IMG/VR virus record: IMGVR_UViG_3300023296_000874
Coordinates: 62,001-126,000 of that record
Strand: one strand, 5' to 3'
Length of the DNA: 64,000 bases
Below are positions 10,746 to 57,604 of the stretch, piece after piece. Below the pieces are notes generated by a model. It was not told the origin of the DNA, ran no database searches, and worked only from the letters and a program-made list of their open reading frames with translations. The first letter of the stretch is position 1; each line of letters opens with the position of its first letter. Both the position numbers and the translations under genes were made by a program.

Positions 10746-10773
10746 CTACAAATGGATCATGATCCTTTTGTAG
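10746..10773. promoter_or_regulatory. Back-to-back pair of class B (putative late) promoter motifs
   Basis: Near-palindrome ctacaaatggaTCATGAtccttttgtag gives TCATGATCCATTTGTAG on minus (toward rmlA) and TCATGATCCTTTTGTAG on plus (toward 10810). Confidence 0.7.
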
Positions 10774-10809
10774 ACGCCGGATGCAAGACCAGTCGTCTCC
10801 GGAGGCATC

Positions 10810-11376
10810 ATGGACCGCATTGCATTTGCTCAGAAGATCAGCCTACTCGCCGACAAGGTGGCGCTGGGCAGCAAGGAGCCTCTCGAGCTCGTACCGGAGG
10901 GAGGCAAGACCCCTTCGAAGAAGGAGATCTCGAAGGCGTGGCCGAACCTCACCTACAAGGGCGACACCATCCACCCTATGAAGAGTGGAAACCTCTACGA
11001 GAAGTGGCAGGACAAGGCTGAGGACAAGCTCCGAGACGATGAGGGCATCGACAGCTTCCAAGAGGTGTATCTCGGGTACGACCCCAAGAAGGACCTCTTC
11101 GTCATGGGTTGGGACCTGTGGCCCGGTGAGGAAGAGTACGACGAGGATGACGAGTACGGAGAAGACGAGGATGGCTACGGACGCTACTCCTCAGAGGGAC
11201 CTCGGAAGGCTGCCGTCAAGAAGCAGGCGAACGACATGGGCTACGCACTCGCCACCATCAAGGATGGCAGGGTGAAGAGCGTTGAGGACTACTGGCCCGG
11301 AGGTGGCTTCTACCGCCACGGGCTCAAGATTGTTCACTCCCACTACAACGGAATCCTCGACCTCAGGCTCGACTGA
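10810..11376 (+). CDS. hypothetical protein with shared N-terminal leader (putative internal virion protein)
   Basis: GGAGG RBS; N-terminus AQKISLLADKVA; acidic central tract. Confidence 0.7.
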   Translation: MDRIAFAQKISLLADKVALGSKEPLELVPEGGKTPSKKEISKAWPNLTYKGDTIHPMKSGNLYEKWQDKAEDKLRDDEGIDSFQEVYLGYDPKKDLFVMGWDLWPGEEEYDEDDEYGEDEDGYGRYSSEGPRKAAVKKQANDMGYALATIKDGRVKSVEDYWPGGGFYRHGLKIVHSHYNGILDLRLD

Positions 11377-12275
11377 TGCACCCAACCCTGAACAGACTTG
11401 CACTCCTTGAGGTCCGGCTCCGCACGGCTGAGATCAGGGAGGCGGTCCGCCATGTGGTAGCCAAGAGCTTCTACCGTAGGCGGGAGGCATCTGTTCGACA
11501 CCTCACTCCGGAGGTGCTGACTGCCTTTGCAGAGGGATTCTGTGAGCAGCCACACAACGTCCGTGAGGCAGGCATTGGCGACATCGTCAAGAAGCTCTCC
11601 AAGCTGGTGAAGCTGTTCCGTCGCGCGCCCAAGCTGCTCGAGCGGATGAAAGAGTTCCTGGGAGATCTTGACCCTCGCACGATCCTGAAGTGGGCGAAGG
11701 ACGGTGTACGTGCTGCCGGGCGGAAGATTCAGAAGGCCGTCAAGTCATGGCCGCTGGCCATGTTCTTCTTCCCCAAGAGCAAGCTTCCGTCACTGAGCGA
11801 CATGATCGCCAACATCGTCAACGGCACCCGGATTGGAGACCTGCTCAAGAAGGTACAGAGCAAGGCGGTGTCGGTAGATGTATGGCTTGAAAAGCACCCT
11901 ATCATCAAGGGGATGTCGAAGCCGGTGCTTGCGGCAGCATTCATCTTCATCTGGATCAACGTCTCTGAGATCTCGTGGGACATGGAGAGCATCTTCCGTG
12001 GCTTCACGGGGCAGATGCCCTTCAGCGAGGTACTGACCTCACTGCCTGAGAGTGCAATCGGCCTGGTGTTTGCCAGCATGGGGATTGGATACGGCTTCAT
12101 GGGACCGGTTCTCATGGCGCGCATCATTTGGCTTGTGGCCTCGAACTACGTCGAGTACGTCCCCGGACGTGGCTTCAAGGTGTTCTGGGACGTCATGGGC
12201 AAGTACACACCGGAGAGCGGTACGTTCCTCGACCGGACGCCTGACGTACAGTTCTTCAAGTGGAGCCCCTCATGA
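11376..12275 (+). CDS. hypothetical protein with hydrophobic C-terminal helices (putative virion/membrane protein)
   Basis: Coupled to the upstream gene; N-terminus LNRLALLEVRLRTA; hydrophobic segments in the C-terminal third. Confidence 0.65.
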   Translation: MHPTLNRLALLEVRLRTAEIREAVRHVVAKSFYRRREASVRHLTPEVLTAFAEGFCEQPHNVREAGIGDIVKKLSKLVKLFRRAPKLLERMKEFLGDLDPRTILKWAKDGVRAAGRKIQKAVKSWPLAMFFFPKSKLPSLSDMIANIVNGTRIGDLLKKVQSKAVSVDVWLEKHPIIKGMSKPVLAAAFIFIWINVSEISWDMESIFRGFTGQMPFSEVLTSLPESAIGLVFASMGIGYGFMGPVLMARIIWLVASNYVEYVPGRGFKVFWDVMGKYTPESGTFLDRTPDVQFFKWSPS

Positions 12276-12685
12276 GCGACAAGACCGCCGCCCGCACCCT
12301 ACGTGAGTTCCTCCTGGCCGGGCAGACTGGACAGGACGATACTCGTGAGCTGCTCCCCTACTCAGGTGTGAACGGACCCAAGGTTCGGACCCTCCCAGAG
12401 GCCATCGCACACTCCAAGACCACGTCAGAGGACAGTGAGGAGTGGTTCAAGGCGAACACCCCGTACCACGGGCGTGATGTGATCGAGCACTTCGACGAGC
12501 TTGTGGGGCAGTTCACCGGGGCAGAGGTACGACCTCGTCCCGGTAGGGACGTTGACCTCATCTCAGGGAAGAGCGGACTCCAAACAAAGGGCTACAGCGA
12601 GGACCACTACACCGCTGTGCCTCAGACCTTCGAGGAGCTTTGCCTCGCGGCAATGGACCAAGAAGGCAAGACACCAAGGGAGTAG
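12272..12685 (+). CDS. hypothetical protein
   Basis: ATGA overlap with the upstream stop; begins MSDKTAART. Confidence 0.6.
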   Translation: MSDKTAARTLREFLLAGQTGQDDTRELLPYSGVNGPKVRTLPEAIAHSKTTSEDSEEWFKANTPYHGRDVIEHFDELVGQFTGAEVRPRPGRDVDLISGKSGLQTKGYSEDHYTAVPQTFEELCLAAMDQEGKTPRE

Positions 12686-12686
12686 C

Positions 12687-13499
12687 GTGAAGCTTTCAAC
12701 TGAAATCGCAGGACTCACCCGTCGCGCGAACGTCGAGAGTGTGACCAAGCACATCCAGACGTGGGGTGACAACGAACTTCGTCACCCGACCCGGTGGCAG
12801 AACGTCATCTACCTCTGCTATGAGCTCGCCAAGAGCACTCAGACCATCGCGGTTGGCGGACCTACATGGGACGGGCCGATGCGAGAGTGGGTCTACGTCA
12901 TGCCTGATGGCATTGGTGTAGAGATGAAGGGCCTTGTGTTCAATCTTGAGCCTGAGGCCTGGTACTACGAGGTTGGGATGGCACCCTGGCCCGACGCCCG
13001 GTCGCTTGAGTTCATCGGCCACAGAGACCACTGGACCCGTGTGTGGTACTGGGTGCTTGCGACGTTGGCTGTCCACGCCGCGAACGGAAAGCCCTATGCC
13101 GGTGTGGAGCGAGTAGTCAAAGGCCGACTCGCGGGCGTGACGTACTTGCAGGGCATGGTTGACCGCATCCTCCCCAAAGCTATTGAGGCGTACCGCAAGG
13201 TTCGCGGCTTTGACCCCAGCCTTGGTGAGTTGAGCGTGTCCTTTTCGGAGATCGTTCCGCCCGATGGGAAGATCGCCGTCTACCAACGGTTCGACTGCAA
13301 AGCCAAGCAGTGCGAGGGTGCCATCAGCATTCACCCGAAGGCTCTACGTGACGAGGGTGGTGAACAGTATCTCGAAACGGTACTCACCCATGAACTTGTC
13401 CACTATCTACTCAACTCGACCAACGCGGCTGACGCCCACGGAGGAGAATTCCAAGCAGTTTCAACACTGCTCGGAATCCCCCGTGAATTCCAGGACTAA
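12687..13499 (+). CDS. SprT-like zinc metalloprotease domain protein with shared leader
   Basis: C-terminal ISIHP...LETVLTHELVH....HGGEF (SprT HExxH...HG..F). GTG start at 12687 after GGGAG gives the leader STEIAGLTRRA. Confidence 0.7.
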   Translation: MKLSTEIAGLTRRANVESVTKHIQTWGDNELRHPTRWQNVIYLCYELAKSTQTIAVGGPTWDGPMREWVYVMPDGIGVEMKGLVFNLEPEAWYYEVGMAPWPDARSLEFIGHRDHWTRVWYWVLATLAVHAANGKPYAGVERVVKGRLAGVTYLQGMVDRILPKAIEAYRKVRGFDPSLGELSVSFSEIVPPDGKIAVYQRFDCKAKQCEGAISIHPKALRDEGGEQYLETVLTHELVHYLLNSTNAADAHGGEFQAVSTLLGIPREFQD

Positions 13500-13502
13500 C
13501 CA

Positions 13503-14024
13503 ATGACAACATCAGCGAACATCAAGAACCTCTCCGGCACCGTTAGTGCTCGCAAGCCACGCGCCCCGAAGCCTGGCGAGGTGTACCAGGACCCTGAGTC
13601 GAAAGAGTGGCTTCTGCTCCCCAAGAAGTACAACTCCAAGCCTGTGCGGATTGACGCACTGCTCCAGGTAGGCGGACTACCTCGACGTCAGGGCGACAAG
13701 GTGACACTCTGGTTCTTCAGGGACCCACCCGAGGGACACAGGTACTGGACCGACATGCACGATCCCGGCGTGGAGATTGACTACAGCAACTACCACATCG
13801 CTCTGGACTACGGACGGTACTTCTTCAGGAAGCAGGACGCTCTCAAGAACGCGAGCACCTGGGACACAGGCAAGGTGGTTGGCCTCATGTCGCTGGACCT
13901 TGACCGCCTGATGCAGAATGGACAGTTCAAGCGCAACGTCGCCCTCAAGACGAAGGGGCGCGGTGCCTCCGGAGGTACGGACGTCACCTCCGGACCGTAC
14001 CTCTACGTGAAGGGCAAGTTCTAA
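13503..14024 (+). CDS. hypothetical protein with shared leader
   Basis: Begins MTTSANIKNLSGTVSA, similar to MTTSAEISLLARSYIA of 53958-54194. Confidence 0.65.
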   Translation: MTTSANIKNLSGTVSARKPRAPKPGEVYQDPESKEWLLLPKKYNSKPVRIDALLQVGGLPRRQGDKVTLWFFRDPPEGHRYWTDMHDPGVEIDYSNYHIALDYGRYFFRKQDALKNASTWDTGKVVGLMSLDLDRLMQNGQFKRNVALKTKGRGASGGTDVTSGPYLYVKGKF

Positions 14025-14299
14025 GCCTGAAGGTTCGTGACGCCGATGAGCTCCCCGAGCAGCGTGCGGCTGAGAGGTTTGCCAGGCTTGTCCTCGTACA
14101 CCTCCCGAACCACGATGCGCTGTGGCGTGCTCTTGGGCACGGACCCCCAGCCCTTGGTGTTGGGAGTGACGTCTGCTGCTGCTTCGTCCCGCATCTTGCA
14201 GTAGACGGCTTGCAGGGTGAGGTCACTGGCATGTCGCATGGTGCCGAAGACGGGCGTCTTGGACGTCAGCCGGTACAGCACATAGATGTATCCGTTCAT
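14021..14299 (-). CDS. hypothetical protein
   Basis: ATG 14299 with GAGG RBS, overlapping the stop of 14296-14487. Confidence 0.55.
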   Translation of the reverse strand: MNGYIYVLYRLTSKTPVFGTMRHASDLTLQAVYCKMRDEAAADVTPNTKGWGSVPKSTPQRIVVREVYEDKPGKPLSRTLLGELIGVTNLQA

Positions 14300-14487
14300 C
14301 GCACAACCTCGAGCGTGTAAGCGGTGAGGCCGAAGCCGCAACCGACGTGATCCTCGGCCCAGGCAATCGCCTGCTCGATGCGGGTGAAGGTCTTGCGGCG
14401 CTTGGGGTCGTCGGTGCGCTGCACACATTGGTGCTCTTCACTGAAGCCCGCGATGTCTTTGCCGCTTTGGTCTTTGAGGTAGTGCAT
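14296..14487 (-). CDS. hypothetical protein (63 aa)
   Basis: ATG 14487 preceded by CGGAG, downstream of a class A promoter. Confidence 0.6.
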   Translation of the reverse strand: MHYLKDQSGKDIAGFSEEHQCVQRTDDPKRRKTFTRIEQAIAWAEDHVGCGFGLTAYTLEVVR

Positions 14488-14492
14488 GGTGT

Positions 14493-14533
14493 CTCCGTAC
14501 CCACTCAACGAGAGCAGGTACGGAGGACTCAGA
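14493..14533 (-). promoter_or_regulatory. Class A promoter TCTGAGT-N16-CGTT (14507-14533) with RBS-sequestering hairpin
   Basis: tctgagt-cctccgtacctgctct-cgtt; inverted repeat ctccgtacc/ggtacggag (14493-14525) pairs with the GGAG RBS. Confidence 0.7.
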
Positions 14534-14535
14534 GA

Positions 14536-14703
14536 CTATGACACGTCCTTCACGTAGCTACCCGGACAGGCGAGGTTCCCGTCCTTGTCTTGAATGGACG
14601 TGTTGGTACACCTCTTCCGGAGGGGGAGTCTGGTCCACCTCACTCTGAACCCGCAGGTGTCGCAGATGTACATCGACTTCAGCAGTGGCATTCGGAACCG
14701 CAT
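14536..14703 (-). CDS. 55-aa zinc-ribbon microprotein (below the ORF-track cutoff)
   Basis: Hand translation MRFRMPLLKSMYICDTCGFRVRWTRLPLRKRCTNTSIQDKDGNLACPGSYVKDVS; GAGGTG RBS. Confidence 0.6.
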   Translation of the reverse strand: MRFRMPLLKSMYICDTCGFRVRWTRLPLRKRCTNTSIQDKDGNLACPGSYVKDVS

Positions 14704-14707
14704 CGGA

Positions 14708-14887
14708 TCACCTCTTCTTGAGAGCGATGCCGTAGCAGATCATCCGGGTGCCACAGGGCTCAACGACCTGCCTCCCGTTTCTTCCTGCGTACTCGACGGG
14801 GTTGGGGCATGAGGGGCGCAGGATGAGCCCGCGCTTGATGAAGGTGTGCCCACATGAGGGGCAGCGGTATTCCTTGGGGACGATCAT
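14708..14887 (-). CDS. 59-aa zinc-ribbon microprotein
   Basis: YRCPSCG...CPN...PCG; same Cys layout as 14536-14703. Confidence 0.6.
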   Translation of the reverse strand: MIVPKEYRCPSCGHTFIKRGLILRPSCPNPVEYAGRNGRQVVEPCGTRMICYGIALKKR

Positions 14888-14889
14888 CG

Positions 14890-15235
14890 GAGTCTTTCCA
14901 GCCGCGAACGGGCTGTCCAGCCTACACATTCCGTGCGGCTGTAATCAAGGGTCTCTGACCGACGAAGGCACCCCGCTCACGTCCAACCCCATTCTTTGCA
15001 CGGAGGAGGGAAGGTGTGAGCGGGGTGCCCAGTCGAAAGATCGCCAGTCCACTCGCTCCCTTGCCTTGGGAGTCCGCTTCGCATACAGGGGGCTGGCATG
15101 GCTCCCATCTAACCGCCCATGGTGCTCAGGCCCCTCTCGAGGCGCTGATCCATAGAGTGCATAACACTTGCCGGGTTCGAACCGGCCACTCACAGGCGCT
15201 GGCAAAAGTCTTCGGGGCTTCTCAGCCCCTTACAT
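14890..15235 (-). ncRNA. candidate structured ncRNA or long structured leader (~350 nt)
   Basis: Own class A promoter at 15242-15268; GNRA-capped hairpins (ggggct-GAGA-agcccc, gcctc-GAGA-ggggc); canonical T-arm gccgg-TTCGAAC-ccggc (15170-15186); 14-bp perfect stem 14967-14980/15016-15029; no credible ORF. Confidence 0.5.
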
Positions 15236-15241
15236 CTCTAC

Positions 15242-15268
15242 AACGAGGCGAGAGCGGCAGCACTCAGA
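15242..15268 (-). promoter_or_regulatory. Class A promoter TCTGAGT-N16-CGTT
   Basis: tctgagt-gctgccgctctcgcct-cgtt. Confidence 0.7.
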
Positions 15269-15270
15269 GA

Positions 15271-15642
15271 CTATTCCGCCCTTTCTTTGGCATCCGCCTC
15301 GTGATCGTCGATTGCCCTCTTGAGCTCAACCAGTTCGTCGTTGGCGCGGTCAAGAGCAGCTTCCAGAGAGCGTCCCGCACGTTGAAGGTCCTCTGCCACC
15401 TCTTCAGCGGCGAGTACCTTCTCCGAGGCAGCGTCGAGCAGCTCCCTCAAACTCTCAATCGAGCCGAGGTGTGGGCGGTAAAACTTGAGCTGTCCCTGCA
15501 CGTACTCAATCGAGTTGCTGGGGTCAGTGTGGTTGATCCTGTTCGCAAGATCCCAAACCATTCGGACGGCCGCAGCCAGGTCGGACTTTGAGTACCTGCT
15601 CGCCTGTCGGGAGAGATGGCTGATGCGGTCTGAAACGTTCAT
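15271..15642 (-). CDS. coiled-coil protein with shared leader (putative internal virion protein)
   Basis: GGAGG RBS; begins MNVSDRISHLSRQA; class B motif 25 nt upstream. Confidence 0.7.
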   Translation of the reverse strand: MNVSDRISHLSRQASRYSKSDLAAAVRMVWDLANRINHTDPSNSIEYVQGQLKFYRPHLGSIESLRELLDAASEKVLAAEEVAEDLQRAGRSLEAALDRANDELVELKRAIDDHEADAKERAE

Positions 15643-15666: not shown

Positions 15667-15683
15667 CTACAAACGGATTATGT
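15667..15683 (-). promoter_or_regulatory. Class B (putative late) promoter motif
   Basis: Minus strand ACATAATCCGTTTGTAG, overlapping the topA stop. Confidence 0.7.
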
Positions 15684-45525: not shown

Positions 45526-48500
45526 TCAAACAACGGTGAGGTTGTTGGCGGAATTGGTCCAGGTGTTGTCATGGAGATCGGGCCACTGGTCATCGCCAGA
45601 ATCACTGTCGATGTTGCCTACCATGACGCCCTGAGCGGGTGGCCAGTTGGTCCCCCGCTGTCCACCGTCGATGCTGTTGTTCACATCCTCGGTGGCATTG
45701 TCTCGAGCAATGTTCCCATTGATGATCACGCCTCCGGGGATGGTCCCCGCGATGGTGGAAACCAGGGATCCGCCTCCATCCTGCTCTCCCGCAACTCCGG
45801 TGTAGATCCGGAAGCCGTTGGAGTTCACGTTCAAGGTGTTGTTGCACACGCTCAACTCCATCACGCGGCCACGCATGATGAGGTACATGCCGTACTCACC
45901 GTTGCCGTAGCAGTTGTTGTCGTTGAACAGGATGCCCGTCATCTGCGCGTTGACGCTGGCCGAGCTCGTTGAGTGTCGCCATCGAATGCCGTCCTCACCG
46001 TTGCTGGTGCATACGTTGGAGCACACGCTCATTCCGCGCACGGAGAATTGAGTGGCGGTGTTCACTCCGTCAATGAAAATGCCGTGGTTGGTGTTGTCGC
46101 TACAGGAGTTTCCAGTGATGCTGAGCCCGCGTAGCTGGCCCGTGGCAGTCGTCGAAGGGGAAATGTAGATGCCGTGATCACCGCAGCTCCAGATGTTGTT
46201 CCCATTCACGTGGATGCCATCAGGGCTGGCGGTCTCCGAAAGGTCCAGGAGGATGCCCGAGCCGCCACAATCCCAGATGGAATTGTTGCTGATGTTGATC
46301 TGATCCGGGGAGGTAGTCGTAGTCCCAAACTCAACCAGAATGCCGTCCGCCTCTGTCTCAATCCGGTTCGAGCAGATTGAGATGTTCTGAAACTCGGATA
46401 GGATGGGGTCTTCAATGTCGAGGTGGATACCGTGGCCGTTGCCACCGGTAAGCATGTTCCCACTGATATCCACATCGGAGATGCCCATGTCACCGGTTGA
46501 GCTGCCGAGGCGGATCTGCCCAACGGCTGCGCCCGAGGTCCCACAGTTGTCGAAGAAGTTGGAGATGATCTGAATCTGAGTCACCCGAATACCAGTCGGG
46601 TTGATGTAGATAGCGCTGTAGTTGACGCTCGTGTAGGCAACCAGGTGGAACGTGTTGTTCTGAATCCGAATGTCGTCCATGGTACCGCTCGCGGCGTCGA
46701 TATCCTCAATGTGGATTCCATACGAGCCAATCAGGTAGAACGTGTTGTCGGTGATGGTCAGCATCCGGAGGTGCGGTGAGGTGCCACCCGCGAGGTTCAG
46801 CTTGATGCCTTCAAGAGTCGCTGTGCTGAATGTGTCCTCGAAGTTGTTGCCCGTGATGGTGGTTCGGTACACCGTATCTGTCTCAAAATGCACCATCCGG
46901 CCACCGGAGCCTACGAACTGGTTCCCCTTCACGGTGGCTCGAACAACGCCGCCCGTCGTGGATCCGAAGTAGAGGTGGTCCGACAGGGAGTCGCTCAGCG
47001 CCTCAGCGATGTTGTCTGAGATGTTGACGTTCGTGATGTCGTTCTGAGCCTCAATAGAGAAGCTCATGTCATCCGTCTTGTAGATGTTGTTGCCCAGGGC
47101 AATCAACCTGTTCAGGTTGCCAGCTCCGGTGTGTCCGGCGTAGATCTTGAGGAACGTGTTCCACTCAGTGCAGTGGTTGTTGTTCACGGTGACGTTGTCG
47201 ATATCCGCAGTGTGTGAGCTCAAAGAGATCGCAGCGCCGTGCGAGGATCCCTGGAACTGGTTGCCGCTGATCACGAAGTCCTTGAAGTCTCCACTGTTGA
47301 TGCTCTGCGCGGATAGGTTGATGCCGTCATCCGTGCCTGCTGTCGCATCCGTAATGTGGTTGCCGGTGATGGTCACGGAGTAGAAGCTACCGTACCCATC
47401 AGTGCCTCCCTCAATGGCGTTATCGGTGATGAGGTCAAGCTGGTTGTCGCTGATCACCAAGTTCCGGAGAACACACGGGTCGCCCACAGTCCCATCCGCC
47501 AGTACGGCAATTCCGTTGCCTCGGACATTGTCAATGGTGTTGTCGGTGACGGTCACCATCTTCAGCACAAAGGTTCCGGCTGAGATGGTTCCGGGCTCCA
47601 CCCGCACCACAATACCGGCGTCGTCCGTGTTGGTGATAGAGTTGCCAGTCACCTTGTGGCCCTGCTTGGTGGTCGTACCGGAGCTATCGTTCCTGTACGC
47701 AACCTCGATGCCCACGCCGCGAGCGGTACCCTTGATGAGGCACTGTGCGATGACGTTGCTTGTGATGTTCAACCTATCGCAGTTCTCAGCGTAGATCCCG
47801 TAGGCGTTCACGTGAGTGCCAGACGGCTGGTAGCTCGTGCCCGTGTTGTTCACGAGCTGGCCAATGTCGTAGATGTTGTTGCCTGAAACAAGGGCTCCTG
47901 TCACATACTCGAGGCCGATGGCCTTGGTGCCCGTGTTCTCCCAGGTCTCACCGCTCGTGGTAGAGGCTACGGCAATGTTCGAGATCGTGTTCCCTGAGAT
48001 GGTCAAGTGGCTCAGCATCGAGGCATTGGAGCCCTGAGCTTCAATGCCCGTAATCAGCCGGGTGATCTGGTTGTTGTTGATTGAGATGTGACGATGTCCG
48101 GGAGATCCGCCGCTGTAAGAAGCATGGATACCAACACCGGTCACATCAGTGCTGGATCCAATGAACCCGTCAATGATGTTGTCGCTGATGTTGGTGTTTC
48201 GAACGTACTGGGAGAGTGAGATACCGAAGGTGGCAACCGAGTTGATCTGGTTCCCTACGATACTCATTCCGATGGTGCGGTCACTGGCTGAGTTCGCACC
48301 TTCAAGGTAGATGCCGCCGCCCACGTCGTTGCAGTCCATCACGTTGTCGTTGATGGTACCGCTGGTGATCTCGTCGAGGTACACGTAGAACGCGCCCGCC
48401 TCTGCCACCCCTGAGCGGAAGTGGTTGCCCGTCACCTGTACCTCATTGGCAGTGGTGATGAAGATCGAGTGGTTCTCTGCTGCCTCAAACTGGCAACCCG

Positions 48501-50280: not shown

Positions 50281-50309
50281 TGGTGTTCTTTCCTATGCTT
50301 CTGAGTCTA

Positions 50310-52886
50310 TCAGAGGAGGCCGAGGCCGATCTGGTACTTCCGGGGGCTAACGATGGGGTTGCCCTTCAGTCGGTACAGAGCGACACAGCTATCTCCGCCA
50401 CCAGCCAGGTCAAAGGCTACGGCGTTTTGTTCGTCATTTGATGTACGGGTGAAAACCATGAGGAGCAAAGTTCCTCGCTTTCCAACCAGTGTGTCTTCTA
50501 CGCAAACAGCGATGCATGGGTAGAGCACACGATGTGGCTTGTCGCCTTGAAGGGATTTGGCGTGGACGCTGGGCTGGTAGATAACCGGGCTTCCAAGCAC
50601 CACATCGTCGTAGGCGCTGCCTCTCAACTCGCTGTAGTAGCTCCGTCCCTCGCCGTCTGTACCCACACTCGTGAAGGCCAGGAAGGGTACGTGCGCCAAG
50701 GGCACATTCACGGGCAACCTGATGAGGCCCCCGTCCGTACCAAAGTCATCCACGCTCAACGCCTGATCGAAGTTCAGGAGGTGGTCTCCGGCATTCATGG
50801 AGGCGTTTGAGGAAGGGAACTGGGAGGCTGGCGAAACGTAGGGGTAGCCCGCGTTGTGTCCACCCGATCCAGCGGTAGTGGTGTAGAGCCAATCAGGAGC
50901 GTAGAGCATGTGGAGGTTCACGTCGGCTACGTTCAAGCCGCCCGCGCCCACGTTGAGGCTCTGCTGTGCGGGGCTCTGGTAGTACAGGGAGCACTGCGAA
51001 ACTGCGGGGAGCGGCTCCTTGCTGATGTAGTCCACGATCATCGCACGGTGAGCAGCGGGTACTGCGGTGTGGAGGATGATGTTGTCCTCCGTGCCGATGC
51101 CCAGATACAGGTTGGTGCTCTTGCCGGGGTCTGCCACGCCGTCGTAGATGCCGGTCACCGTTCGGATCTGGTGAGGCAGGTGTGTCTCTCCTGTAGTCCG
51201 AGAGGTGATGGCGAGGTCCGTGTAGGTGAACTGCACCACCAGGCACGCGGTCCGGCTGGGCTTGTAGAACAGGCTGTCGGGATCCATGGTAGTCGATACC
51301 ATGCCGCCTGGAACCACGTTCTCGTACACCAAGCCATCACCCGCAGTCAGCGTAGTGATGTCACCCGAAGTGCCGATGCCTTCCTGGTAGAGGTGCGGTG
51401 TGCGGCTGAGGCCCGCGTCACCGGGGAACATGACGCCCACCTTCACGAATAGCGTGCCGCCTGTGCGGCTACCTACCGGGATGTTGGTGTCAAAGTCCGG
51501 GGAGAGTACGACGGTCAGGGTCTTGGTGTTCAAACCCGTCACGGAGAAGTCAACGGAGGAGTACCCACTGAGGGTCCCCATCACTTCAATGCGCTCAAAC
51601 AGCCCGTCAGATGCCACCGGGAGGCCGATGTCGAACGTGTCTCCGGCTCCCCAGATGCCGCCCGTGATGGCTACGGTTCGGTCACCGAGTGTGATCTCTT
51701 GGAACACCTCGTTGCCGGTCACCGCGTCGCTGAAGTGCTTGCGGAAGGCGTCTGCCTCCCCAATGAGCGTAGCGCCAGGAGTGTCAACGGGTCCAACCTC
51801 GTCGATTGCCCGGATGTACGTGCCGCGCCCACCACCGCCGAGGTTGTGGTCCTCGAAGTCGGTCTTGAGCTTGTTGTCGAGCAGCCAGGCGAAGTTCCTC
51901 TTGAGCATGGCTTCCATGTCCCAATCAGCGCTCACCGTCTTGCGGAGGTCCAGGATGTCCTGCTCAACGACGTCATCGTGAGCAAAGCCGGTGGGTGAGG
52001 TGCCCGAGCCACCGTTCTGGTTGGTGTCCTGAGCCCAGGTGGTCTGGTTCCGACGTGCCACGGCGCAGAGCGGGATCGCGTAGATGTTCCCGTCTACCGT
52101 GTGGGTGGTCGTGTTGTGTCCGCTGGATACCCAAAGGCCGGGGTCACCATCGACGTTGCTGCTGGTAAATGCGATGGCTGACGGGGAGGAGTCAGGGCCT
52201 TGTGCCAGTACGTTGCCGGTGTCGTCCAGCCCGTCGGGGTAGGAGTACATGTCCACGTCTTCAACGATGCGGATGCGCCACTGGATCTGCACACGCCTGG
52301 ATGTCTCCGCACCTACACCGCCGTCCAACACGTCATCGACGAAGTTGTCAGCGGTAGGGGAGTCTACCCAACCGTTGTAGAAGATCTTGCCGTTGGCGTC
52401 ACGGTGTCCGTTGGTGGTGTCCGTGGCAGCGGTGCCCGTCAGGGGCGCACGCCATACCTCAATGAACACGAGGTCCCAGCGCTTCGCACCAACGCCTGTC
52501 GGGGCCGCTGGTAGCGTGATGGTGAGCCACTCTTCGTTCTTCTCCTGCAGGTTCACGAGCATGTCAGCTACGTGAGCTACCTGTCCGGGTCCGAAGTAGA
52601 AGGTATTGGCAGTGGTGCCGCCGCCGAAGGTCTTTTCGTTCCTGAAGTTGCCTGGCTCATCGATGTAGCCAGTGCCGACAGGGAACACGTCGGGGCTGAA
52701 GTAGTCCCGGCTGAACAGAAATCCCGAGCAGATCTGCCCGGATCGGTAGAGGTGCTTGAGGAAAAGTTCGCCCGCGAGGTTGAACTCTTTGTCCAGCGGT
52801 GGTCTGCCCGTGCGCCAGGTTACCTGTTCGAGCGACTTGTTGTCGGGCTCGAGGTATCCGCTCACGGGACCGAAGTCCTTGCTCAT
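50310..52886 (-). CDS. baseplate/tail structural protein (858 aa), paralog of 40030-44862
   Basis: GRPPLDKEFN, VFIEVW, GAETSRRVQIQWRIR, DPGLW, VDGNIYAIPLCAVARRN. Confidence 0.75.
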   Translation of the reverse strand: MSKDFGPVSGYLEPDNKSLEQVTWRTGRPPLDKEFNLAGELFLKHLYRSGQICSGFLFSRDYFSPDVFPVGTGYIDEPGNFRNEKTFGGGTTANTFYFGPGQVAHVADMLVNLQEKNEEWLTITLPAAPTGVGAKRWDLVFIEVWRAPLTGTAATDTTNGHRDANGKIFYNGWVDSPTADNFVDDVLDGGVGAETSRRVQIQWRIRIVEDVDMYSYPDGLDDTGNVLAQGPDSSPSAIAFTSSNVDGDPGLWVSSGHNTTTHTVDGNIYAIPLCAVARRNQTTWAQDTNQNGGSGTSPTGFAHDDVVEQDILDLRKTVSADWDMEAMLKRNFAWLLDNKLKTDFEDHNLGGGGRGTYIRAIDEVGPVDTPGATLIGEADAFRKHFSDAVTGNEVFQEITLGDRTVAITGGIWGAGDTFDIGLPVASDGLFERIEVMGTLSGYSSVDFSVTGLNTKTLTVVLSPDFDTNIPVGSRTGGTLFVKVGVMFPGDAGLSRTPHLYQEGIGTSGDITTLTAGDGLVYENVVPGGMVSTTMDPDSLFYKPSRTACLVVQFTYTDLAITSRTTGETHLPHQIRTVTGIYDGVADPGKSTNLYLGIGTEDNIILHTAVPAAHRAMIVDYISKEPLPAVSQCSLYYQSPAQQSLNVGAGGLNVADVNLHMLYAPDWLYTTTAGSGGHNAGYPYVSPASQFPSSNASMNAGDHLLNFDQALSVDDFGTDGGLIRLPVNVPLAHVPFLAFTSVGTDGEGRSYYSELRGSAYDDVVLGSPVIYQPSVHAKSLQGDKPHRVLYPCIAVCVEDTLVGKRGTLLLMVFTRTSNDEQNAVAFDLAGGGDSCVALYRLKGNPIVSPRKYQIGLGLL

Positions 52887-52925
52887 GTTGCTCCTCTAAT
52901 CTGGATGTGGTGTGTATTTGGGGGT

Positions 52926-52965
52926 GGAACAGGGCGCTGGGGTCCGGGGTCCCAGCACCCATTCC
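52926..52965. terminator. GC-rich intergenic hairpin
   Basis: ggaa..ggg.gctggg/cccagc.ccc.ttcc; no clear U-tract. Confidence 0.35.
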
Positions 52966-52980
52966 GATCTTCAGGTTGGA

Positions 52981-53193
52981 TCAACCACCAGCACCCGGAC
53001 CACCGCTCTCCTGGTTCGCGCCGACAGCGGCACTTGCAGAAGCAGTGTTGTTCACGGTGAGGCCTGCACGCAGGCCGGGGTTGAGCTTGGGAGGACCACC
53101 GCCGAGAGACGGGATGTGCGTGTTGACGCTGGTCTTCACCTTGCCATTGAGGCTGATGCTTCGCATCTTGAGCCGGTTGTAGTAAACAGCCAT
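52981..53193 (-). CDS. small hypothetical protein
   Basis: GGAGAG RBS; located in the structural operon. Confidence 0.5.
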   Translation of the reverse strand: MAVYYNRLKMRSISLNGKVKTSVNTHIPSLGGGPPKLNPGLRAGLTVNNTASASAAVGANQESGGPGAGG

Positions 53194-53274
53194 GAGTTTC
53201 TCTCCAGTTTGGTTTTTCGACGTCGAATTGCCTGATGGATGTGTGTATCTGAGGAGTATAGCCTCGTAAGGTCC

Positions 53275-53949
53275 CTACTCCGAATTACTGCTCTCATGGA
53301 TTTCGTAGGACAACTCTCCAAGCTTCAAGGCAGTCTTCTGGATCTCGGCCCGAAGGGATTTCAGTTGGCGGTCCTGTCCATCGAGTAGGGGGCCGTAGCC
53401 GGAGAGGAGCTCAAGTTCGTGAGCGATACCTCCGATGCCTCTGTGGAGCCAGTTGACAGAATCCTTGAAGTGGGTTTCGTAGTACCTATCGCCGCCGCGC
53501 GAGTGTTTGGCTGAAGTCACAGCCTTGTCAGCAGCAGTCGTGCCCCCACCGAGCATTCCTGAAATGTCTCCGAGTCCCGAGTCGAGGTCCTCAATGGCAT
53601 CTTGTACCGCCACGATCTCAGAGTGGAAGGCGTCCATGGCACTGGAGCCTCCCATCTCGTCCGGTAGCTTATCAAACTCTTCAGTCACGTCACCGAGCGC
53701 GTCGGTAAGTCGGCTCATGGCACGCTTGAAGTGCTTGCGGTAGATCGGGTCCGACGAGGCCTGCACCGTCCGCGCAAGGCGGCTGATGTTGTCAGAAAGG
53801 CTCGCCTTGAAGGTGTGGTCAGGCTTCATGTTCTTGTAGATTCCCATGATGTACGCATAGTTGCCGCCCTTGCCCGCTTCAGCAGCGATTTCCTTGGCAC
53901 GGTCCCACTTGTGTTCGTCGCGGGGTGTGTCAACTACGCCACCGGGCAT
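53275..53949 (-). CDS. putative virion protein with an internal copy of the shared leader
   Basis: N-terminal E..W..AK......YAYIMGIYK.M module, then KA-SLSDNISRLARTVQA, then helical domains. Confidence 0.7.
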   Translation of the reverse strand: MPGGVVDTPRDEHKWDRAKEIAAEAGKGGNYAYIMGIYKNMKPDHTFKASLSDNISRLARTVQASSDPIYRKHFKRAMSRLTDALGDVTEEFDKLPDEMGGSSAMDAFHSEIVAVQDAIEDLDSGLGDISGMLGGGTTAADKAVTSAKHSRGGDRYYETHFKDSVNWLHRGIGGIAHELELLSGYGPLLDGQDRQLKSLRAEIQKTALKLGELSYEIHESSNSE

Positions 53950-53957
53950 GTCAGCTC

Positions 53958-54194
53958 CTACTTGTTTTCTTGGATGGAAGAGAACCTGTGCAACGTCTTC
54001 CGCATGTCCTGCAGCCGGTCACGCGCCTTTTCGGGCGAGTAGCTCAGCAGAGCCAGAATCTCATCAACTTCCTTCACAAGAGGCTTCACAACTACGGTCG
54101 GCTTGCCGGTGTCGCGGACGTCCATGTCCATGTAGCGAGCGCGGTCGGCAATGTAGGAGCGAGCAAGGAGGGAAATCTCAGCGGATGTGGTCAC
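53958..54194 (-). CDS. small protein with shared leader
   Basis: GAGG RBS, GTG start, MTTSAEISLLARSYIA. Confidence 0.65.
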   Translation of the reverse strand: MTTSAEISLLARSYIADRARYMDMDVRDTGKPTVVVKPLVKEVDEILALLSYSPEKARDRLQDMRKTLHRFSSIQENK

Positions 54195-54210
54195 AATCGG
54201 TACCTCTCTA

Positions 54211-54816
54211 TCAGAAGGTCACGCGCCACACAAACGTCAGGGTCATGGAGCCTGGCTTGTTGATGACGTTGAAGTTGCGGACGTTGAGGAACGAGTCGTA
54301 GTTCCTACGGTCCACCGAGGGGTCATTCCAAGAGCCTTGAGCAATCGGAGTAGCCACAAGCGGCGGGGTGATGTCTACAGCGGCACACACGATGCCCATC
54401 TCAACCAGAGGCCCTACGGCTTCAGACGTGCTGTACGTCACAGTGAAGTCGAGGATGTTGGTCGGGATGGCCGATGTGGAGCCACCAGCGTCGATGAAGT
54501 CAATGGCACTGAACTGCTTGCGGTCGATCTCAGCGTAGAGGGAGCCCTGTGTGGCTGCCGCTGCTGGGACGCTCTGTAGGTCCCACCCGGCGTCCCCAGT
54601 TCCTACTGCGAGTGCAAACGCACCAGCCGAGGGCTCTGTAGGGTCAGCCACCAAACGGGCCACGAGGATGCTCGCGTCGTTGGTGATGACGTTCTTGCCG
54701 AGGTAGGTGAAGGCCTTCTTCTCACCCGGACGCTCCATCTTGTACCAGATCTGACCCGTGAAAGGGATCGACCGAGATACTTCAATGAGCGGGGGGTGTG
54801 CAAGCTGCTCAATCAT
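54211..54816 (-). CDS. tail-collar/fibre-attachment protein
   Basis: KNVITN....LVARL, AVGTG, L..EI.RK, EA.GPL.EMG, F.VINK.....LT..W..TF. Confidence 0.7.
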   Translation of the reverse strand: MIEQLAHPPLIEVSRSIPFTGQIWYKMERPGEKKAFTYLGKNVITNDASILVARLVADPTEPSAGAFALAVGTGDAGWDLQSVPAAAATQGSLYAEIDRKQFSAIDFIDAGGSTSAIPTNILDFTVTYSTSEAVGPLVEMGIVCAAVDITPPLVATPIAQGSWNDPSVDRRNYDSFLNVRNFNVINKPGSMTLTFVWRVTF

Positions 54817-54970
54817 TGGTCTTCTTCTCTGGCTTTGGTTTTGTGTCTTCCTTGGCAGTGTAGCCCTGACGCAGGTCAACGTTCACGGCCTTGCCGTCCG
54901 GCTCTTGTAGCCTGACGACCATTACATCCGCACGGATGGGCTTCTGAAATCTGTCCGACGCTCTGGGCAT
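54809..54970 (-). CDS. small hypothetical protein (53 aa)
   Basis: GGGAG RBS, ATG 54970, first gene after a class B motif. Confidence 0.55.
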   Translation of the reverse strand: MPRASDRFQKPIRADVMVVRLQEPDGKAVNVDLRQGYTAKEDTKPKPEKKTND

Positions 54971-54996: not shown

Positions 54997-55013
54997 CTAC
55001 AAACGGATTATGA
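54997..55013 (-). promoter_or_regulatory. Class B (putative late) promoter motif
   Basis: TCATAATCCGTTTGTAG at the head of the tail operon. Confidence 0.75.
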
Positions 55014-55474: not shown

Positions 55475-55476
55475 TC

Positions 55477-57549
55477 CTACGGCGGTGAGCCCAGCACCAA
55501 GTCCCGCTCGTTTGAGGGAAGGTGGCTTGTGGTTGCTCCGAGGATCACCGTGATGTCACCCTCGTCATTCCAATGCCCCAGCAGCTCGTTGTTGAACAGG
55601 ACGTCCGAGCCGTTGAAGTTGCTCTCGTTCATCACGAACATGCCGGTCAGATCGTAGCTCTCGCCTCGCCCTGTCTCGCCGCCGATGCCCAAGTTGGAGA
55701 GTGGGGAGTCTGTAATGGCTGCGGTGTCAAAGTCGTCGGAGTCAGGTACGGTCACTGAGGCTGTCTGCGTGAGCTGACATCCCTCTACTCCCTCGAAGTT
55801 GTTGAGCAGGTCCGTACCGTTGAGGTCGCTCTGGTTGAAGATGAACAGCCCATCTTCGTCGCAGAAGGGGATGCTCGGGAAGGTGAACGTCTCTTCCAAG
55901 CCGTCATCGATGCTCAGCCCAACGAGTCCATCGTCACAGGCCACATGGATGAGGCCTTCCTCTCCGGTCTCCGTCTTGGACAGGTTCAGAGGAGCGCTGA
56001 AGTGCTCGCCCGGTGTGAGGGTCACCCATGTCAGTGCTGGGTTCTCGGATGCTACTTCTTGAGGTGTGTCGCCGCCCCATGCAGAGGAACCCCAATCCAC
56101 ATCGCCGAAGGAGCCGTACTCGGAGAGGTCAATGCCGTCCTCAAGCTCGAACACCGGGTTGCCCGCGATCTTCGTCTCGACGATCGGTGTCCCTTCGTTC
56201 AGTGGGTGCTCGAGTCCGCTCGCATCGGTCTGGTCCGGAGATAGAACGTAGTTGGCCCAGTTGAGTACGTGACGGTGTCCGAAGATTCGGCCGTCCGTAT
56301 CGCTGATCTGGTGCGGGGGCTCGTTCAGTACGAGGCGCGTGGGGTCGTTGAGGCCTGCGGTGTAGGCGGTCTCAAAGCCCTCGTAGCTCCAGTACACCTG
56401 CTTCGGGTTGATGGCCTGTACGGAGTTGAGTACCCAACGTACCGGGAACTTCTCGTAGCCACCGCCCCAGATGGTCCGGCCCGGCTGGTTGAGCAGCAGT
56501 CCGAAGGAGGTGTTCTTCCAGTAGTTGTACTCGACAACTACCGTGTCTGAAGGGACCACGGGTGCCGACAGGGTGATGATGCCGGATGCACCATCCACGT
56601 CCGCTACCGTCACGACGGTGCCGTTGACGGTGACTGTCACGTCGTCAGCGCCGCCGATGTTGGGGCTGGTGTCCGCGTCCGTGATGGGGCCGTTGGACGT
56701 GTAGATGAGTAGCCCCGCCATGCCCGAGAAGTCCTCGGTGACCGGGATGGCCTTGTTGACGCCCAAGCGGTCGCGGCCCTCTACTCCCTCACAGTACTTG
56801 CGTGCATCGTCGTAGTCGTGGTCCCAGATGTTCTCGGTCTTCACCGTGTCGTCGGCGTTCTTCACCAACTCCATCAGGTCAGTGAAGATGAACCTGAGCA
56901 CGTAGAGCGTGTGTGCGGGCTTCACCAGCTTGAGCAGGAAGTCCAGCTTGACGCTGATGTCCTGGAAGTTGCGGCTGATGTTCTCGGTGAGCTCGAAGTC
57001 CACCCGGAAGCCGAACTGATCGCTGATGTCAAAGGCGCTCAGCGGGTTGCGTGCGTCCTTGAAGTTCTCACTGAGCGTAACCACGCCCTCTTCGCCCACG
57101 AAGCGCTCGATGCCCGCCACGATGTTCGCGGGGGTGGATCCTCCGAAGAAGATCGCCACAAGCGACTGAACGAAGTCGCAGAACTCCTGGCTACTGAAGA
57201 TGCTGAGCTGAAGATTCTTGTTCAACGCCAGCATGGAGCCGAGCTTCTGGTAGGCCAGGTCAGCGCGGTTGTCGCAGTATGCCGGTGTGTTGAAGTAGGT
57301 GTCGCCCTCGAGGTCCTCAATCGCCAACCGGATGCGAGCGAACTCGATGGCGTAGGCCCGGAGTGCGATGGCGTAGTTGGGTCCGGTGATCGAGCTCTGG
57401 TAGTTGGAGGGGAGGACGTTGCGGAGATCCTTCTCAATCTCGAGCGACTTGTCCTTCAACCTTGTCCTAAAGACCTTGCCTTCCCGACCGACCTGGCTGA
57501 ACGCCCGTCGGTTCCGGATGTCAAGTAGTCTGAAGAAATCAACGGCCAT
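55477..57549 (-). CDS. baseplate wedge protein (gpI/gp7-like)
   Basis: LPSNY, F.GSTP.NI, L.LVKPAHT motifs typical of the partner of baseplate J; FxxN.S..NG repeats. Confidence 0.7.
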   Translation of the reverse strand: MAVDFFRLLDIRNRRAFSQVGREGKVFRTRLKDKSLEIEKDLRNVLPSNYQSSITGPNYAIALRAYAIEFARIRLAIEDLEGDTYFNTPAYCDNRADLAYQKLGSMLALNKNLQLSIFSSQEFCDFVQSLVAIFFGGSTPANIVAGIERFVGEEGVVTLSENFKDARNPLSAFDISDQFGFRVDFELTENISRNFQDISVKLDFLLKLVKPAHTLYVLRFIFTDLMELVKNADDTVKTENIWDHDYDDARKYCEGVEGRDRLGVNKAIPVTEDFSGMAGLLIYTSNGPITDADTSPNIGGADDVTVTVNGTVVTVADVDGASGIITLSAPVVPSDTVVVEYNYWKNTSFGLLLNQPGRTIWGGGYEKFPVRWVLNSVQAINPKQVYWSYEGFETAYTAGLNDPTRLVLNEPPHQISDTDGRIFGHRHVLNWANYVLSPDQTDASGLEHPLNEGTPIVETKIAGNPVFELEDGIDLSEYGSFGDVDWGSSAWGGDTPQEVASENPALTWVTLTPGEHFSAPLNLSKTETGEEGLIHVACDDGLVGLSIDDGLEETFTFPSIPFCDEDGLFIFNQSDLNGTDLLNNFEGVEGCQLTQTASVTVPDSDDFDTAAITDSPLSNLGIGGETGRGESYDLTGMFVMNESNFNGSDVLFNNELLGHWNDEGDITVILGATTSHLPSNERDLVLGSPP

Positions 57550-57587
57550 GTTCGGTCCTCTTATGGATCTGATCTGTCAAGCCTGAC

Positions 57588-57604
57588 CTACAAATGCAGT
57601 ATGA
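57588..57604 (-). promoter_or_regulatory. Class B promoter motif variant
   Basis: TCATACTGCATTTGTAG, 39 nt upstream of the baseplate gene. Confidence 0.6.

What the first reader, a model, noticed from the sequence alone, without database searches (positions are those of the whole stretch)
10746..57604. 17-bp late-promoter-like motif TCATAATCCGTTTGTAG, including an overlapping divergent pair
Copies lie at 10746-10762 (-), 10757-10773 (+), 15667-15683 (-), 38471-38487 (-), 54997-55013 (-) and 57588-57604 (-), about 25-45 nt upstream of a start codon. They precede tail/baseplate operons, leader-bearing genes and the rmlA operon, and never the class A genes. The single contiguous block without a -35 element suggests a phage-specific late sigma or RNAP. 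At 10746-10773 two copies share TCATGA and form a bidirectional element.
Basis: partly seen in the sequence, partly recalled or inferred. Interest (0 to 1): 0.68.

Follow-up and report, generated by a model that had tools for sequence, protein, structure and literature searches.

The report
Late-gene promoter of a jumbo phage
A 17-base DNA signal repeated about 33 times in an uncultured giant bacteriophage marks the start of its capsid, tail, baseplate and lysis operons and is almost certainly that phage's own structural-gene (late) promoter; this is an ordinary kind of element with a new sequence.

Summary
All six copies are at the stated coordinates, against 0.02 expected by chance. The window lies in a 257.5-kb IMG/VR phage contig, which I extended to 322 kb. 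It carries 29 clean copies, plus 3-4 in the extension.

All copies point the same way as the next gene. 28 of 29 are intergenic, and they lie a median of 40 nt before a start codon. No -35 element or other flanking conservation is present. They head the operons for major capsid protein, portal/terminase, tail sheath, baseplate, tail spike and endolysin, and a sugar-nucleotide operon.

A second motif, TCTGAsT-N16-CGTT (66 sites), heads the replication, translation and metabolism genes.

In eight related metagenomic contigs (protein identity about 35-75%) the 17-mer sits at the same intergenic positions. It is 90% identical there, while the flanks are 36% identical.

The motif contains a canonical -10-like CATAAT. 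One site forces the transcription start into, or within 3 nt after, the motif.

No phage RNA polymerase or gp55-like factor was found. One RpoD-like sigma gene lies 59 kb beyond the contig end and is the best candidate reader; that link is inferred, not shown. No RNA data could be obtained. It is a new member of a known kind.

The parts
10746..10762 (-). Class B promoter copy (TCATGATCCATTTGTAG), 26 nt before the ATG of the NTP-transferase operon. It is one half of the divergent pair.
10757..10773 (+). Class B promoter copy (TCATGATCCTTTTGTAG), 36 nt before the ATG at 10810. It shares TCATGA with the minus-strand copy.
15667..15683 (-). Class B copy (ACATAATCCGTTTGTAG), 24 nt before the ATG at 15642. 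It overlaps the last codons and stop of the topoisomerase gene.
38471..38487 (-). Class B copy (TCATAATCGTTTTGTGG), 41 nt before the ATG of a 679-aa gene.
54997..55013 (-). Class B copy with a perfect match to the consensus, 26 nt before the ATG at 54970. It heads the 16-kb run of genes that ends with the beta-helix tail-spike-like and 1610-aa proteins.
57588..57604 (-). Class B copy (TCATACTGCATTTGTAG), 38 nt before the ATG of a 690-aa gene. It lies back to back with a class A site at 57617-57643 (+).
5427..10719 (-). Operon served by the 10746 copy: RmlA-like NTP transferase, a PLP-dependent enzyme, two LPG_synthase_C-like proteins, a methyltransferase and a T5orf172-domain protein.
10810..14024 (+). 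Five-gene operon served by the 10757 copy. Functions are unknown apart from one weak SprT-like hit.
14021..15642 (-). Run of five small genes served by the 15667 copy.
33209..38429 (-). Operon served by the 38471 copy (679-aa protein and four more genes; no family hits for the 679-aa protein).
38495..54970 (-). Operon served by the 54997 copy. It includes the 858-aa, 1584-aa (right-handed beta-helix, tail-spike PHROG) and 1610-aa proteins.
55477..57549 (-). 690-aa gene served by the 57588 copy. It has an ortholog next to the baseplate genes of relative G002.
60742..64000 (-). Baseplate-wedge-like gene (1154 aa, runs past the window end). Its operon is headed by a class B copy just outside the window, at window coordinate 66423.
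37..63 (-). Class A site (TCTAACTT-N15-CGTT), listed for contrast: this is the other promoter class.
3910..3937 (-). Class A site heading the Clp-protease-like gene run.
5387..5413 (-). Class A site. It marks where the class B-headed rml operon ends.
21498..21524 (-). Class A site heading the run that includes topoisomerase IA.
27806..27832 (-). Class A site.
33727..33753 (-). Class A site.
57617..57643 (+). Class A site, divergent from the class B copy at 57588.

Best explanation
The 17-mer TCATAATCCnTTTGTAG is the promoter of the structural, lysis and virion-modification ('late') gene class of an uncultured jumbo myovirus of at least 322 kb, whose capsid resembles that of Bacillus phage G. 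It is one of two phage-specific promoter classes. The other is the bipartite TCTGAsT-N16-CGTT, which serves replication, translation and metabolism genes. Proposed anatomy: positions 2-7 (CATAAT) act as a -10 hexamer, with the invariant A3 at -11 and the invariant T7 at -7. CCnTTT is the discriminator, and transcription starts at G14 or A16 inside TTTGTAG. No -35 element is used. Proposed reader: host core RNA polymerase carrying a phage-encoded specificity factor. The best candidate is the single RpoD-like sigma (318 aa, regions 1.2-4.2) encoded 59 kb to the left of the contig. What is shown: position, orientation, gene class, conservation in relatives, absence of a -35 element, and absence of any recognisable phage RNA polymerase. 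What is inferred: that it is a promoter (about 0.85), that it is late (about 0.75), where transcription starts (about 0.5), and that the RpoD-like sigma reads it (about 0.4). The overall confidence given refers to 'phage-specific promoter of the structural/lysis gene class'.
For: Statistics: 6 sites against 0.02 expected in the window. The contig has 29 sites with a bimodal score distribution.

Position: all sites are co-oriented with the next gene. 28 of 29 are intergenic although only 6.5% of the DNA is non-coding. The motif-to-ATG distance is 12-70 nt for 26 of the 29, with a median of 40.

Gene class: the motif heads the operons with endolysin and sheath, portal, protease and large terminase, the major capsid protein (E 1e-61 to PDB 6wkk), baseplate wedge, hub and tape-measure-like genes and a tail-spike-like gene. 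The class A motif heads different genes.

Conservation: at eight orthologous intergenic positions in related contigs the motif is 200/221 identical, while 20-nt flanks are 186/520 identical. L102-L104 and G001 were found through proteins rather than through the motif.

Divergent pairs leave no room for another promoter.

Start site: at genome 128423 an in-frame TAG inside the motif and a Shine-Dalgarno sequence 3 nt after it force the start into, or no more than 3 nt after, the motif.

The conservation profile of CATAAT (A3 28/29, T7 29/29, positions 5-6 the most variable) mimics a -10 hexamer.

Canonical -35/-10 promoters are not enriched (2 observed against 3-9 in shuffles).

The phage sigma keeps the -10-reading residues (YATWWIKQAMTRA) and aligns with RpoD at E 7e-46. 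A 16-bit class-B-like element lies 42 nt before the sigma gene's own ATG.
Against: 'Promoter', 'late' and the start site therefore all rest on sequence logic.

The sigma's region 4.2 also looks canonical (TRERVRQI), which would predict use of a -35 element, and none is conserved. Ten conserved bases downstream of a -10 hexamer are unusual for sigma70-family promoters. C at -12 is not the usual T.

The host's own primary sigma could read CATAAT equally well.

Two promoter classes but only one recognisable sigma means at least one specificity factor is unidentified.

The genome is not closed. About a third of the contig's proteins were not scanned against family libraries.

Some class B operons are not structural (sugar-nucleotide operon, small ORFs, a SIR2-like gene).
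Confidence: 0.75

Rival explanations
1. The motif is a composite site. The host primary-sigma holoenzyme uses CATAAT as a -10 element, and an unidentified phage late activator or co-factor binds the adjacent CCnTTTGTAG block. That factor could bind duplex DNA or the non-template strand, in the manner of a Q-like or gp33/gp45-like helper. The phage RpoD-like sigma would serve something else.
For: CATAAT is a good -10 element for any group 1 sigma. The 10-bp downstream block is as strongly conserved as the hexamer and has no known sigma70-family reader. At least one specificity factor is missing anyway, since there are two classes and one sigma.
Against: No candidate activator was identified. 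The block is asymmetric and abuts the hexamer, which is unusual for a separate DNA-binding protein. A phage that carries its own RpoD-like sigma but has no canonical promoters needs some target for it.
Confidence: 0.2
2. The motif is the promoter of an unrecognised phage RNA polymerase (single-subunit or a divergent two-barrel enzyme). The enzyme would be encoded among the many unknown ORFs or in the part of the genome not yet recovered.
For: A contiguous, asymmetric, 27-bit block that contains the start site, has no weak intermediates and stays near-invariant across relatives resembles T7-type promoters more than typical sigma promoters (own knowledge). Several very large ORFs (1610, 1535, 1140, 879 aa) have no family hit.
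Against: There is no PF00940 or Rpb2_6 match in six-frame searches of the contig. No DxDGD-type or T7 motif A/C signatures occur in a plausible protein. Nothing appears in the precomputed Pfam of the 65-kb extension. The large unknown ORFs sit inside tail and baseplate operons.
Confidence: 0.12
3. The motif acts in RNA, as a 5'-leader element (processing site, stability or translation signal) of transcripts started elsewhere.
For: It is strand-specific and always lies upstream of start codons. Some leaders contain a small hairpin next to the Shine-Dalgarno sequence.
Against: Spacing to the start codon varies from 12 to 122 nt. The overlapping and back-to-back divergent pairs leave no space for separate promoters. 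There is no Rfam match and no other conserved element upstream within 50 nt. The hairpin shows no covariation.
Confidence: 0.05
4. It is a chance or selfish repeat (a remnant of a miniature mobile element, or iterons for replication or packaging).
For: None beyond the repetition itself.
Against: 0.02 are expected by chance. Only 17 bp are shared and the flanks are unrelated. All copies are gene-oriented and are conserved at orthologous sites in diverged relatives.
Confidence: 0.01

Closest known systems
T4-type late promoters (TATAAATA read by gp55 with gp33 and the gp45 clamp; own knowledge)
   Same: A single A/T-rich block near -10, no -35 element, placed before virion and lysis genes, with specificity supplied by a phage factor on host core polymerase.
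   Different: The sequence is unrelated and twice as long (17 against 8 bp). No gp55-like protein was detected (a single-sequence search, so of weak power). The only sigma found is a full RpoD-like protein.
RpoD-like sigma factors of jumbo phages that lack their own RNA polymerase (Iyer et al. 2021, PMC7824862, read)
   Same: This is a jumbo phage without a recognisable RNA polymerase that carries a sigma close to cellular RpoD. This is the strategy that review describes for its group 2 phages.
   Different: This phage has a family A DNA polymerase and a capsid like that of phage G, so it does not fit the group 2 marker set. The review reports no cognate promoters for such sigmas.
T7-family single-subunit RNA polymerase promoters (own knowledge)
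   Same: A contiguous, highly informative, asymmetric block that probably includes the start site, with near-identical copies across a genome.
   Different: No T7-like polymerase gene was found in 322 kb (and the precomputed Pfam). The block contains a bacterial-type -10 hexamer.
-35-independent middle and late promoters of phages that keep the host primary sigma, such as the Thermus phage P23-45 group (own knowledge)
   Same: A -10-type element without a -35 element drives late genes.
   Different: Those promoters rely on an extended -10 TG. Here there is no TG, and instead there are ten conserved bases downstream of the hexamer.
ECF-sigma promoters (AAC at -35, CGT at -10; own knowledge)
   Same: This description fits the genome's other motif, class A.
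   Different: Class B has neither element. No ECF sigma gene is recognisable in the phage.

Membership tests
Bacterial sigma70-family promoter (group 1/2 sigma) | -10 hexamer of the form TAnnnT with invariant A(-11) and T(-7) | tested here: met
   In CATAAT at motif positions 2-7, A3 is 28/29, T7 is 29/29 and positions 5-6 are the most variable. However, -12 is C rather than T.
Bacterial sigma70-family promoter (group 1/2 sigma) | -35 hexamer 16-18 bp upstream, or an extended -10 TG | tested here: not met
   No informative column lies within 50 nt upstream, and there is no TG before the hexamer.
Bacterial sigma70-family promoter (group 1/2 sigma) | Transcription start 6-9 nt downstream of the hexamer | tested here: inconclusive
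   One site (genome 128423) requires the start inside, or no more than 3 nt after, the motif. No RNA 5'-end data are available.
Bacterial sigma70-family promoter (group 1/2 sigma) | A cognate sigma is available | tested here: met
   A 318-aa phage sigma has Pfam regions r2, r3 and r4. It is RpoD/RpoS/SigB-like and keeps the -10-reading residues. That it binds this motif was not tested.
T4-type late promoter | TATAAATA consensus at -10 | tested here: not met
   The consensus here is TCATAATCCnTTTGTAG.
T4-type late promoter | gp55-family minimal sigma encoded by the phage | tested here: inconclusive
   phmmer of T4 gp55 against all ORFs of 60 aa or more in the 322 kb gives a best E of 2.3. A single-sequence search can miss distant relatives.
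T7-type single-subunit polymerase promoter | Phage-encoded single-subunit RNA polymerase | tested here: not met
   PF00940 finds no candidate, although the control genomes also had none. No motif A/B/C signatures occur in one protein. The genome is not closed.
T7-type single-subunit polymerase promoter | Contiguous conserved block of about 17-23 bp spanning the start site | tested here: inconclusive
   The block is 17 bp and contiguous. The start site is inferred, not mapped.
phiKZ/AR9-type non-virion polymerase late promoter | Split beta/beta'-like polymerase genes in the phage | tested here: not met
   There is no Rpb2_6 match and no DxDGD catalytic signature in a large protein.
Sigma54 (-24/-12) promoter | GG and GC dinucleotides one helical turn apart | tested here: not met
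   Two half-sites lie 10 bp apart (CATAAT and TTGTAG), but the motif has no GG or GC.

The most novel reading that the evidence does not exclude
A phage-encoded sigma that looks like a housekeeping RpoD reads a 17-bp contiguous promoter. In it, ten invariant bases downstream of the -10 hexamer (the discriminator and first transcribed bases) replace the -35 element. That would be a recognition mode not described for group 1/2 sigmas. Meanwhile the phage's 66 ECF-like class A promoters would be read by a factor that no sequence method recognises. Together these would define a self-contained two-factor transcription programme in giant phages with a phage-G-like capsid.
Probability: 0.25. Interest if true: 0.6.

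Novelty: new member of a known kind. Interest (0 to 1): 0.4.

Why it matters
It gives a complete, testable promoter map (two classes, about 100 sites) for a lineage of giant environmental phages in which most genes have no known function. Class membership alone sorts roughly 240 genes into 'virion/lysis' and 'replication/host takeover' sets. The pairing of a 27-bit, -35-less promoter with an RpoD-like phage sigma is a compact system for studying how sigma factors gain specificity. It is also a possible orthogonal expression part for GC-rich hosts. It does not change any general picture of phage transcription.

Tried and rejected
- Exact-motif scan of IMG/VR: 58 single hits, none in a relative. 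This is the chance level.
- Distant relatives: G002 (206 kb, 24-44% aa identity) and Tunturiibacter phage Tunturi_5 show no excess over the reversed-pattern control. AT-rich relatives found through the portal protein give only ambiguous PWM hits.
- Six-frame searches of the contig for Sigma70_r2, r4, r4_2, T7 RNA polymerase and Rpb2_6 found nothing. The sigma was found only by walking outside the contig.
- Pfam 'batch' scans list only the 25 top families per batch. They did not cover about 121-170 kb and 202-257 kb, so absence of a factor there is not shown.
- Closing the circle failed. 64.9 kb were added to the left with overlaps of 99.96-100% identity, but the right end was not reached, and the 64.7-kb ENA contig is not held by the genome search.
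- The search for related loci with the 408-aa head protein failed because of low-complexity patterns.
- Intrinsic terminators and canonical sigma70 promoters are not enriched.
- There are no Rfam matches in the window.
- The leader hairpin has no covariation.
- The iterated PWM drifted into codon-biased antisense sequence and was replaced by the clean-site PWM.
- A sigma54-like reading was considered because the two half-sites lie one helical turn apart. It was rejected for lack of GG and GC.
- A Bacteroidota-type -7 element (TAnnTTTG) was considered. It was rejected because the A is replaced by C and the genes use strong Shine-Dalgarno sites.


Full report
**Observation.** The pattern search reproduces the six sites at the stated coordinates and strands with 0-3 mismatches. 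Dinucleotide shuffles give 0.02 matches on average, and none reaches six. An alignment of the six sites with 70-nt flanks shows that only the 17-mer is shared. At 10746-10773 the two copies overlap by the palindrome TCATGA and face outwards.

**Genomic setting.** The window is bases 62,001-126,000 of a 257,533-bp IMG/VR virus contig. The contig is 59.5% G+C, linear, and 81% complete by CheckV. I called 322 genes with a codon-usage and Shine-Dalgarno heuristic, covering 93% of the sequence.

With up to 3 mismatches the contig holds 27 copies. A PWM made from 29 curated sites gives 27 minus-strand and 2 plus-strand sites at 15 bits or more and almost nothing between 9 and 15 bits, so the distribution is cleanly bimodal.
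- All 29 sites point the same way as the next gene.
- 28 of 29 are intergenic, although only 6.5% of the DNA is non-coding.
- The gap to the start codon is 12-70 nt for 26 of them, with a median of 40.
- One outlier (232 nt) has an uncalled small ORF with a Shine-Dalgarno site 25 nt downstream. Another (295 nt) lies inside a weakly supported ORF.

Column statistics from -50 to +30 show information only in the 17 columns (about 27 bits). There is no -35 element and no TG. A weak G sits six nt after the motif.

**What the motif precedes.** First genes, or genes within the operons it heads, are:
- an endolysin and the 1193-aa tail sheath;
- the portal, head protease and large terminase;
- the major capsid protein, 297 aa, E 1e-61 to PDB 6wkk 'Gp27 major capsid protein' (supported);
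- baseplate wedge, hub/lysozyme and tape-measure-like proteins;
- a 1584-aa beta-helix tail-spike-like protein;
- an operon beginning with an RmlA-like NTP transferase, followed by a PLP-dependent enzyme, two LPG_synthase_C-like proteins and a methyltransferase.

The highest-scoring copies sit before the head operon (genome 220458) and as a tandem pair at 211472/211395.

The 60-kb run of minus-strand genes from about 10 to 72 kb has no copy. It encodes IF3, aminoacyl-tRNA synthetases, PRPP synthetase, L7/L12, nucleotide enzymes and similar functions.

**A second promoter class.** K-mer enrichment in upstream regions brought out a second element, TCTGAsT-N16-CGTT(g). It has 66 sites in the extended genome and a weakly conserved rTA nine nt after CGTT. 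It resembles ECF-sigma promoters (AAC-type -35, CGT-type -10; own knowledge).

This class heads operons holding topoisomerase IA, a Clp-protease-like gene, tRNA nucleotidyltransferase and many small ORFs. The family A DNA polymerase gene could not be assigned to either class.

Assigning each gene to its nearest upstream same-strand site gives 129 class B genes, 114 class A genes and 79 unassigned. Class A and class B sites lie back to back at window 57588/57617 and at genome 170455/170522.

**Comparative evidence.** A protein search with the 408-aa head protein found orthologs of 70, 69 and 56% identity on small metagenomic contigs. All three carry the exact 17-mer 42-44 nt before the ATG.

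A scan of metagenome contigs for the motif was mostly chance hits. It nevertheless recovered five further relatives (L114, L160, L201, L214, L229), recognised by tblastn at 35-65% identity. These carry additional copies beyond the one that found them, at positions orthologous to genome 150065, 211472/211395 (again a tandem pair), 209873, 202590 (with the same CCC variant), 237955 and 247470.

A syntenic tail-module contig found through the sheath protein (G001, 51% G+C) has a degenerate copy before one orthologous gene and a much weaker resemblance (10 of 17) before the sheath gene.

Over all orthologous pairs the motif is 200/221 (90%) identical. Ungapped 20-nt flanks are 186/520 (36%) identical. 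More distant relatives lack the motif: G002 and Tunturiibacter phage Tunturi_5 (PMC11924767), and the AT-rich relatives found through the portal protein. G002 has its own bipartite CTAACTT-N13-GGGTA motif. The element is therefore under strong purifying selection in a narrow clade.

**Why a promoter rather than an RNA signal.**
- Spacing to the start codon is variable.
- There is no Rfam match and no secondary structure of its own.
- In the overlapping pair at 10746-10773, and in a back-to-back pair found in the extension, no room remains for separate promoters.
- At genome 128423 an in-frame TAG inside the motif excludes an upstream start codon, and a strong Shine-Dalgarno sequence begins 3 nt after the motif. 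The mRNA must therefore begin inside the motif or within 3 nt of its end.

That geometry places CATAAT (positions 2-7) where a -10 hexamer belongs. Its conservation profile matches one: A3 and T7 are essentially invariant and positions 5-6 are the most variable. The predicted start is G14 or A16.

**Who reads it.** Six-frame searches of the contig found no Sigma70 r2, r4 or r4_2 domain, no T7-type polymerase and no Rpb2 domain. Catalytic-motif searches were also negative.

Other assemblies carry the same proteins, so I walked 64.9 kb beyond the left end of the contig. Successive overlaps of 2.4-11.4 kb are 99.96-100% identical. This stretch is dense with class A sites and holds three or four more class B sites.

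At 59-60 kb from the contig end lies a 318-aa gene with Pfam Sigma70 r2, r3 and r4.
- It is RpoD/RpoS/SigB-like, below every equivalog cut-off.
- It aligns with RpoD structures at E 7e-46.
- It keeps the region 2.4 and region 4.2 residues that read -10 and -35 elements.
- It has only two close homologs in 5.8 billion proteins, at 76% and 42% identity.
- It has no paralog, and no T4 gp55 relative exists, among all ORFs of the 322 kb.

Canonical -35/-10 promoters are not enriched in the genome (2 observed against 3-9 in shuffles). The class B CATAAT is therefore the only conserved canonical -10-like element available to this sigma. A 16-bit class-B-like element, followed by TTGCAG-N18-TACAAT, precedes the sigma gene itself.

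This makes the sigma the best candidate reader, but only by inference. Its canonical region 4.2 and the ten conserved bases downstream of the hexamer are not explained. The factor for class A is unknown.

**Relation to known systems.** The logic matches that described for jumbo phages that lack their own polymerase and carry sigma factors, some of them RpoD-like (PMC7824862). It also matches late promoters without a -35 element, as in T4 (own knowledge). The sequence, the length and the downstream block are new. The membership tests are listed separately.

**Verdict.** It is a real, strongly selected, phage-specific promoter of the structural and lysis gene class: a new member of a known kind. 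Its start site, its timing and its reader remain unmeasured.

Noticed in passing
window 37-63, 3910-3937, 5387-5413, 21498-21524, 27806-27832, 33727-33753 (all -), 57617-57643 (+); 66 sites in the 322-kb extended genome: A second, bipartite promoter-like motif, TCTGAsT-N16-CGTT(g), with a weak rTA nine nt further on. It is ECF-sigma-like in form and heads replication, translation and metabolism operons. No ECF sigma gene is recognisable in the phage.
   Followed up: partly
L255:4793-5749 (-), about 59-60 kb left of the contig's first base (outside the window): A 318-aa RpoD-like sigma gene, the only sigma in 322 kb. Its 100-nt upstream region holds a 16-bit class-B-like element and a TTGCAG-N18-TACAAT candidate host-type promoter.
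   Followed up: partly
Loci L234, L239, L240, L242, L243, L245, L248, L255: The IMG/VR contig is incomplete. Other assemblies extend it by 64.9 kb to the left with 99.96-100% identical overlaps. The extension is full of small unknown ORFs and also holds Thg1, RNA ligases, two more aminoacyl-tRNA synthetases, MazG, SIR2 and UDG. The circle was not closed.
   Followed up: partly
L017:18260-19153 (-) = genome 217567-218460: The major capsid protein matches PDB 6wkk 'Gp27 major capsid protein' at E 1e-61, and the C-terminal part of the sheath matches Bacillus phage G and actinophage sheaths. The phage therefore belongs to a lineage with a phage-G-like capsid. Its nearest sheath relatives are an uncultured 485-kb phage (LR745208) and Tunturiibacter phage Tunturi_5.
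   Followed up: partly
genome 1-62 kb and 170-202 kb (L009-L012, L015-L016): There is a large translation and metabolism gene set: IF3, class I and class II aminoacyl-tRNA synthetases, L7/L12, peptide deformylase, Cpn10, tRNA nucleotidyltransferase, PRPP synthetase, aspartate/ornithine carbamoyltransferase, ABC transporter parts and a PARP-like domain.
   Followed up: no
window 5427-10719 (-): The class B-headed 'rml' operon couples an NTP transferase with a PLP-dependent enzyme, two LPG_synthase_C-like (aminoacyl-transferase fold) proteins and a methyltransferase. This could be a virion or DNA glycan/amino-acid modification pathway expressed together with the structural genes.
   Followed up: no
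extension, 62,623 and 62,595 bases left of contig base 1 (L255 2265 -, 2293 +): A second divergent class B pair, back to back with 11 nt between the copies. One copy is strong (26.8 bits) and the other weak (14.1 bits).
   Followed up: no
genome 163148-163164 (-) and 186763-186779 (-): Two class B copies do not sit just before a called gene. One lies inside a weakly supported 187-aa ORF, whose start is probably mis-called or which holds an internal promoter. The other precedes an uncalled small ORF with a good Shine-Dalgarno site 25 nt downstream.
   Followed up: no
L022 / G002 (IMGVR_UViG_3300043411_001777): This distant relative has its own bipartite motif, CTAACTT-N13-GGGTA. It shares the -35-like half with class A but has a different -10-like half, and one copy lies directly before its sheath gene.
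   Followed up: partly
L018:1525-1573 (-) and orthologous leaders in L102-L104: The leader of the 408-aa head gene has a short stem next to the Shine-Dalgarno sequence. It is conserved in sequence in close relatives, but there are no compensatory changes.
   Followed up: yes
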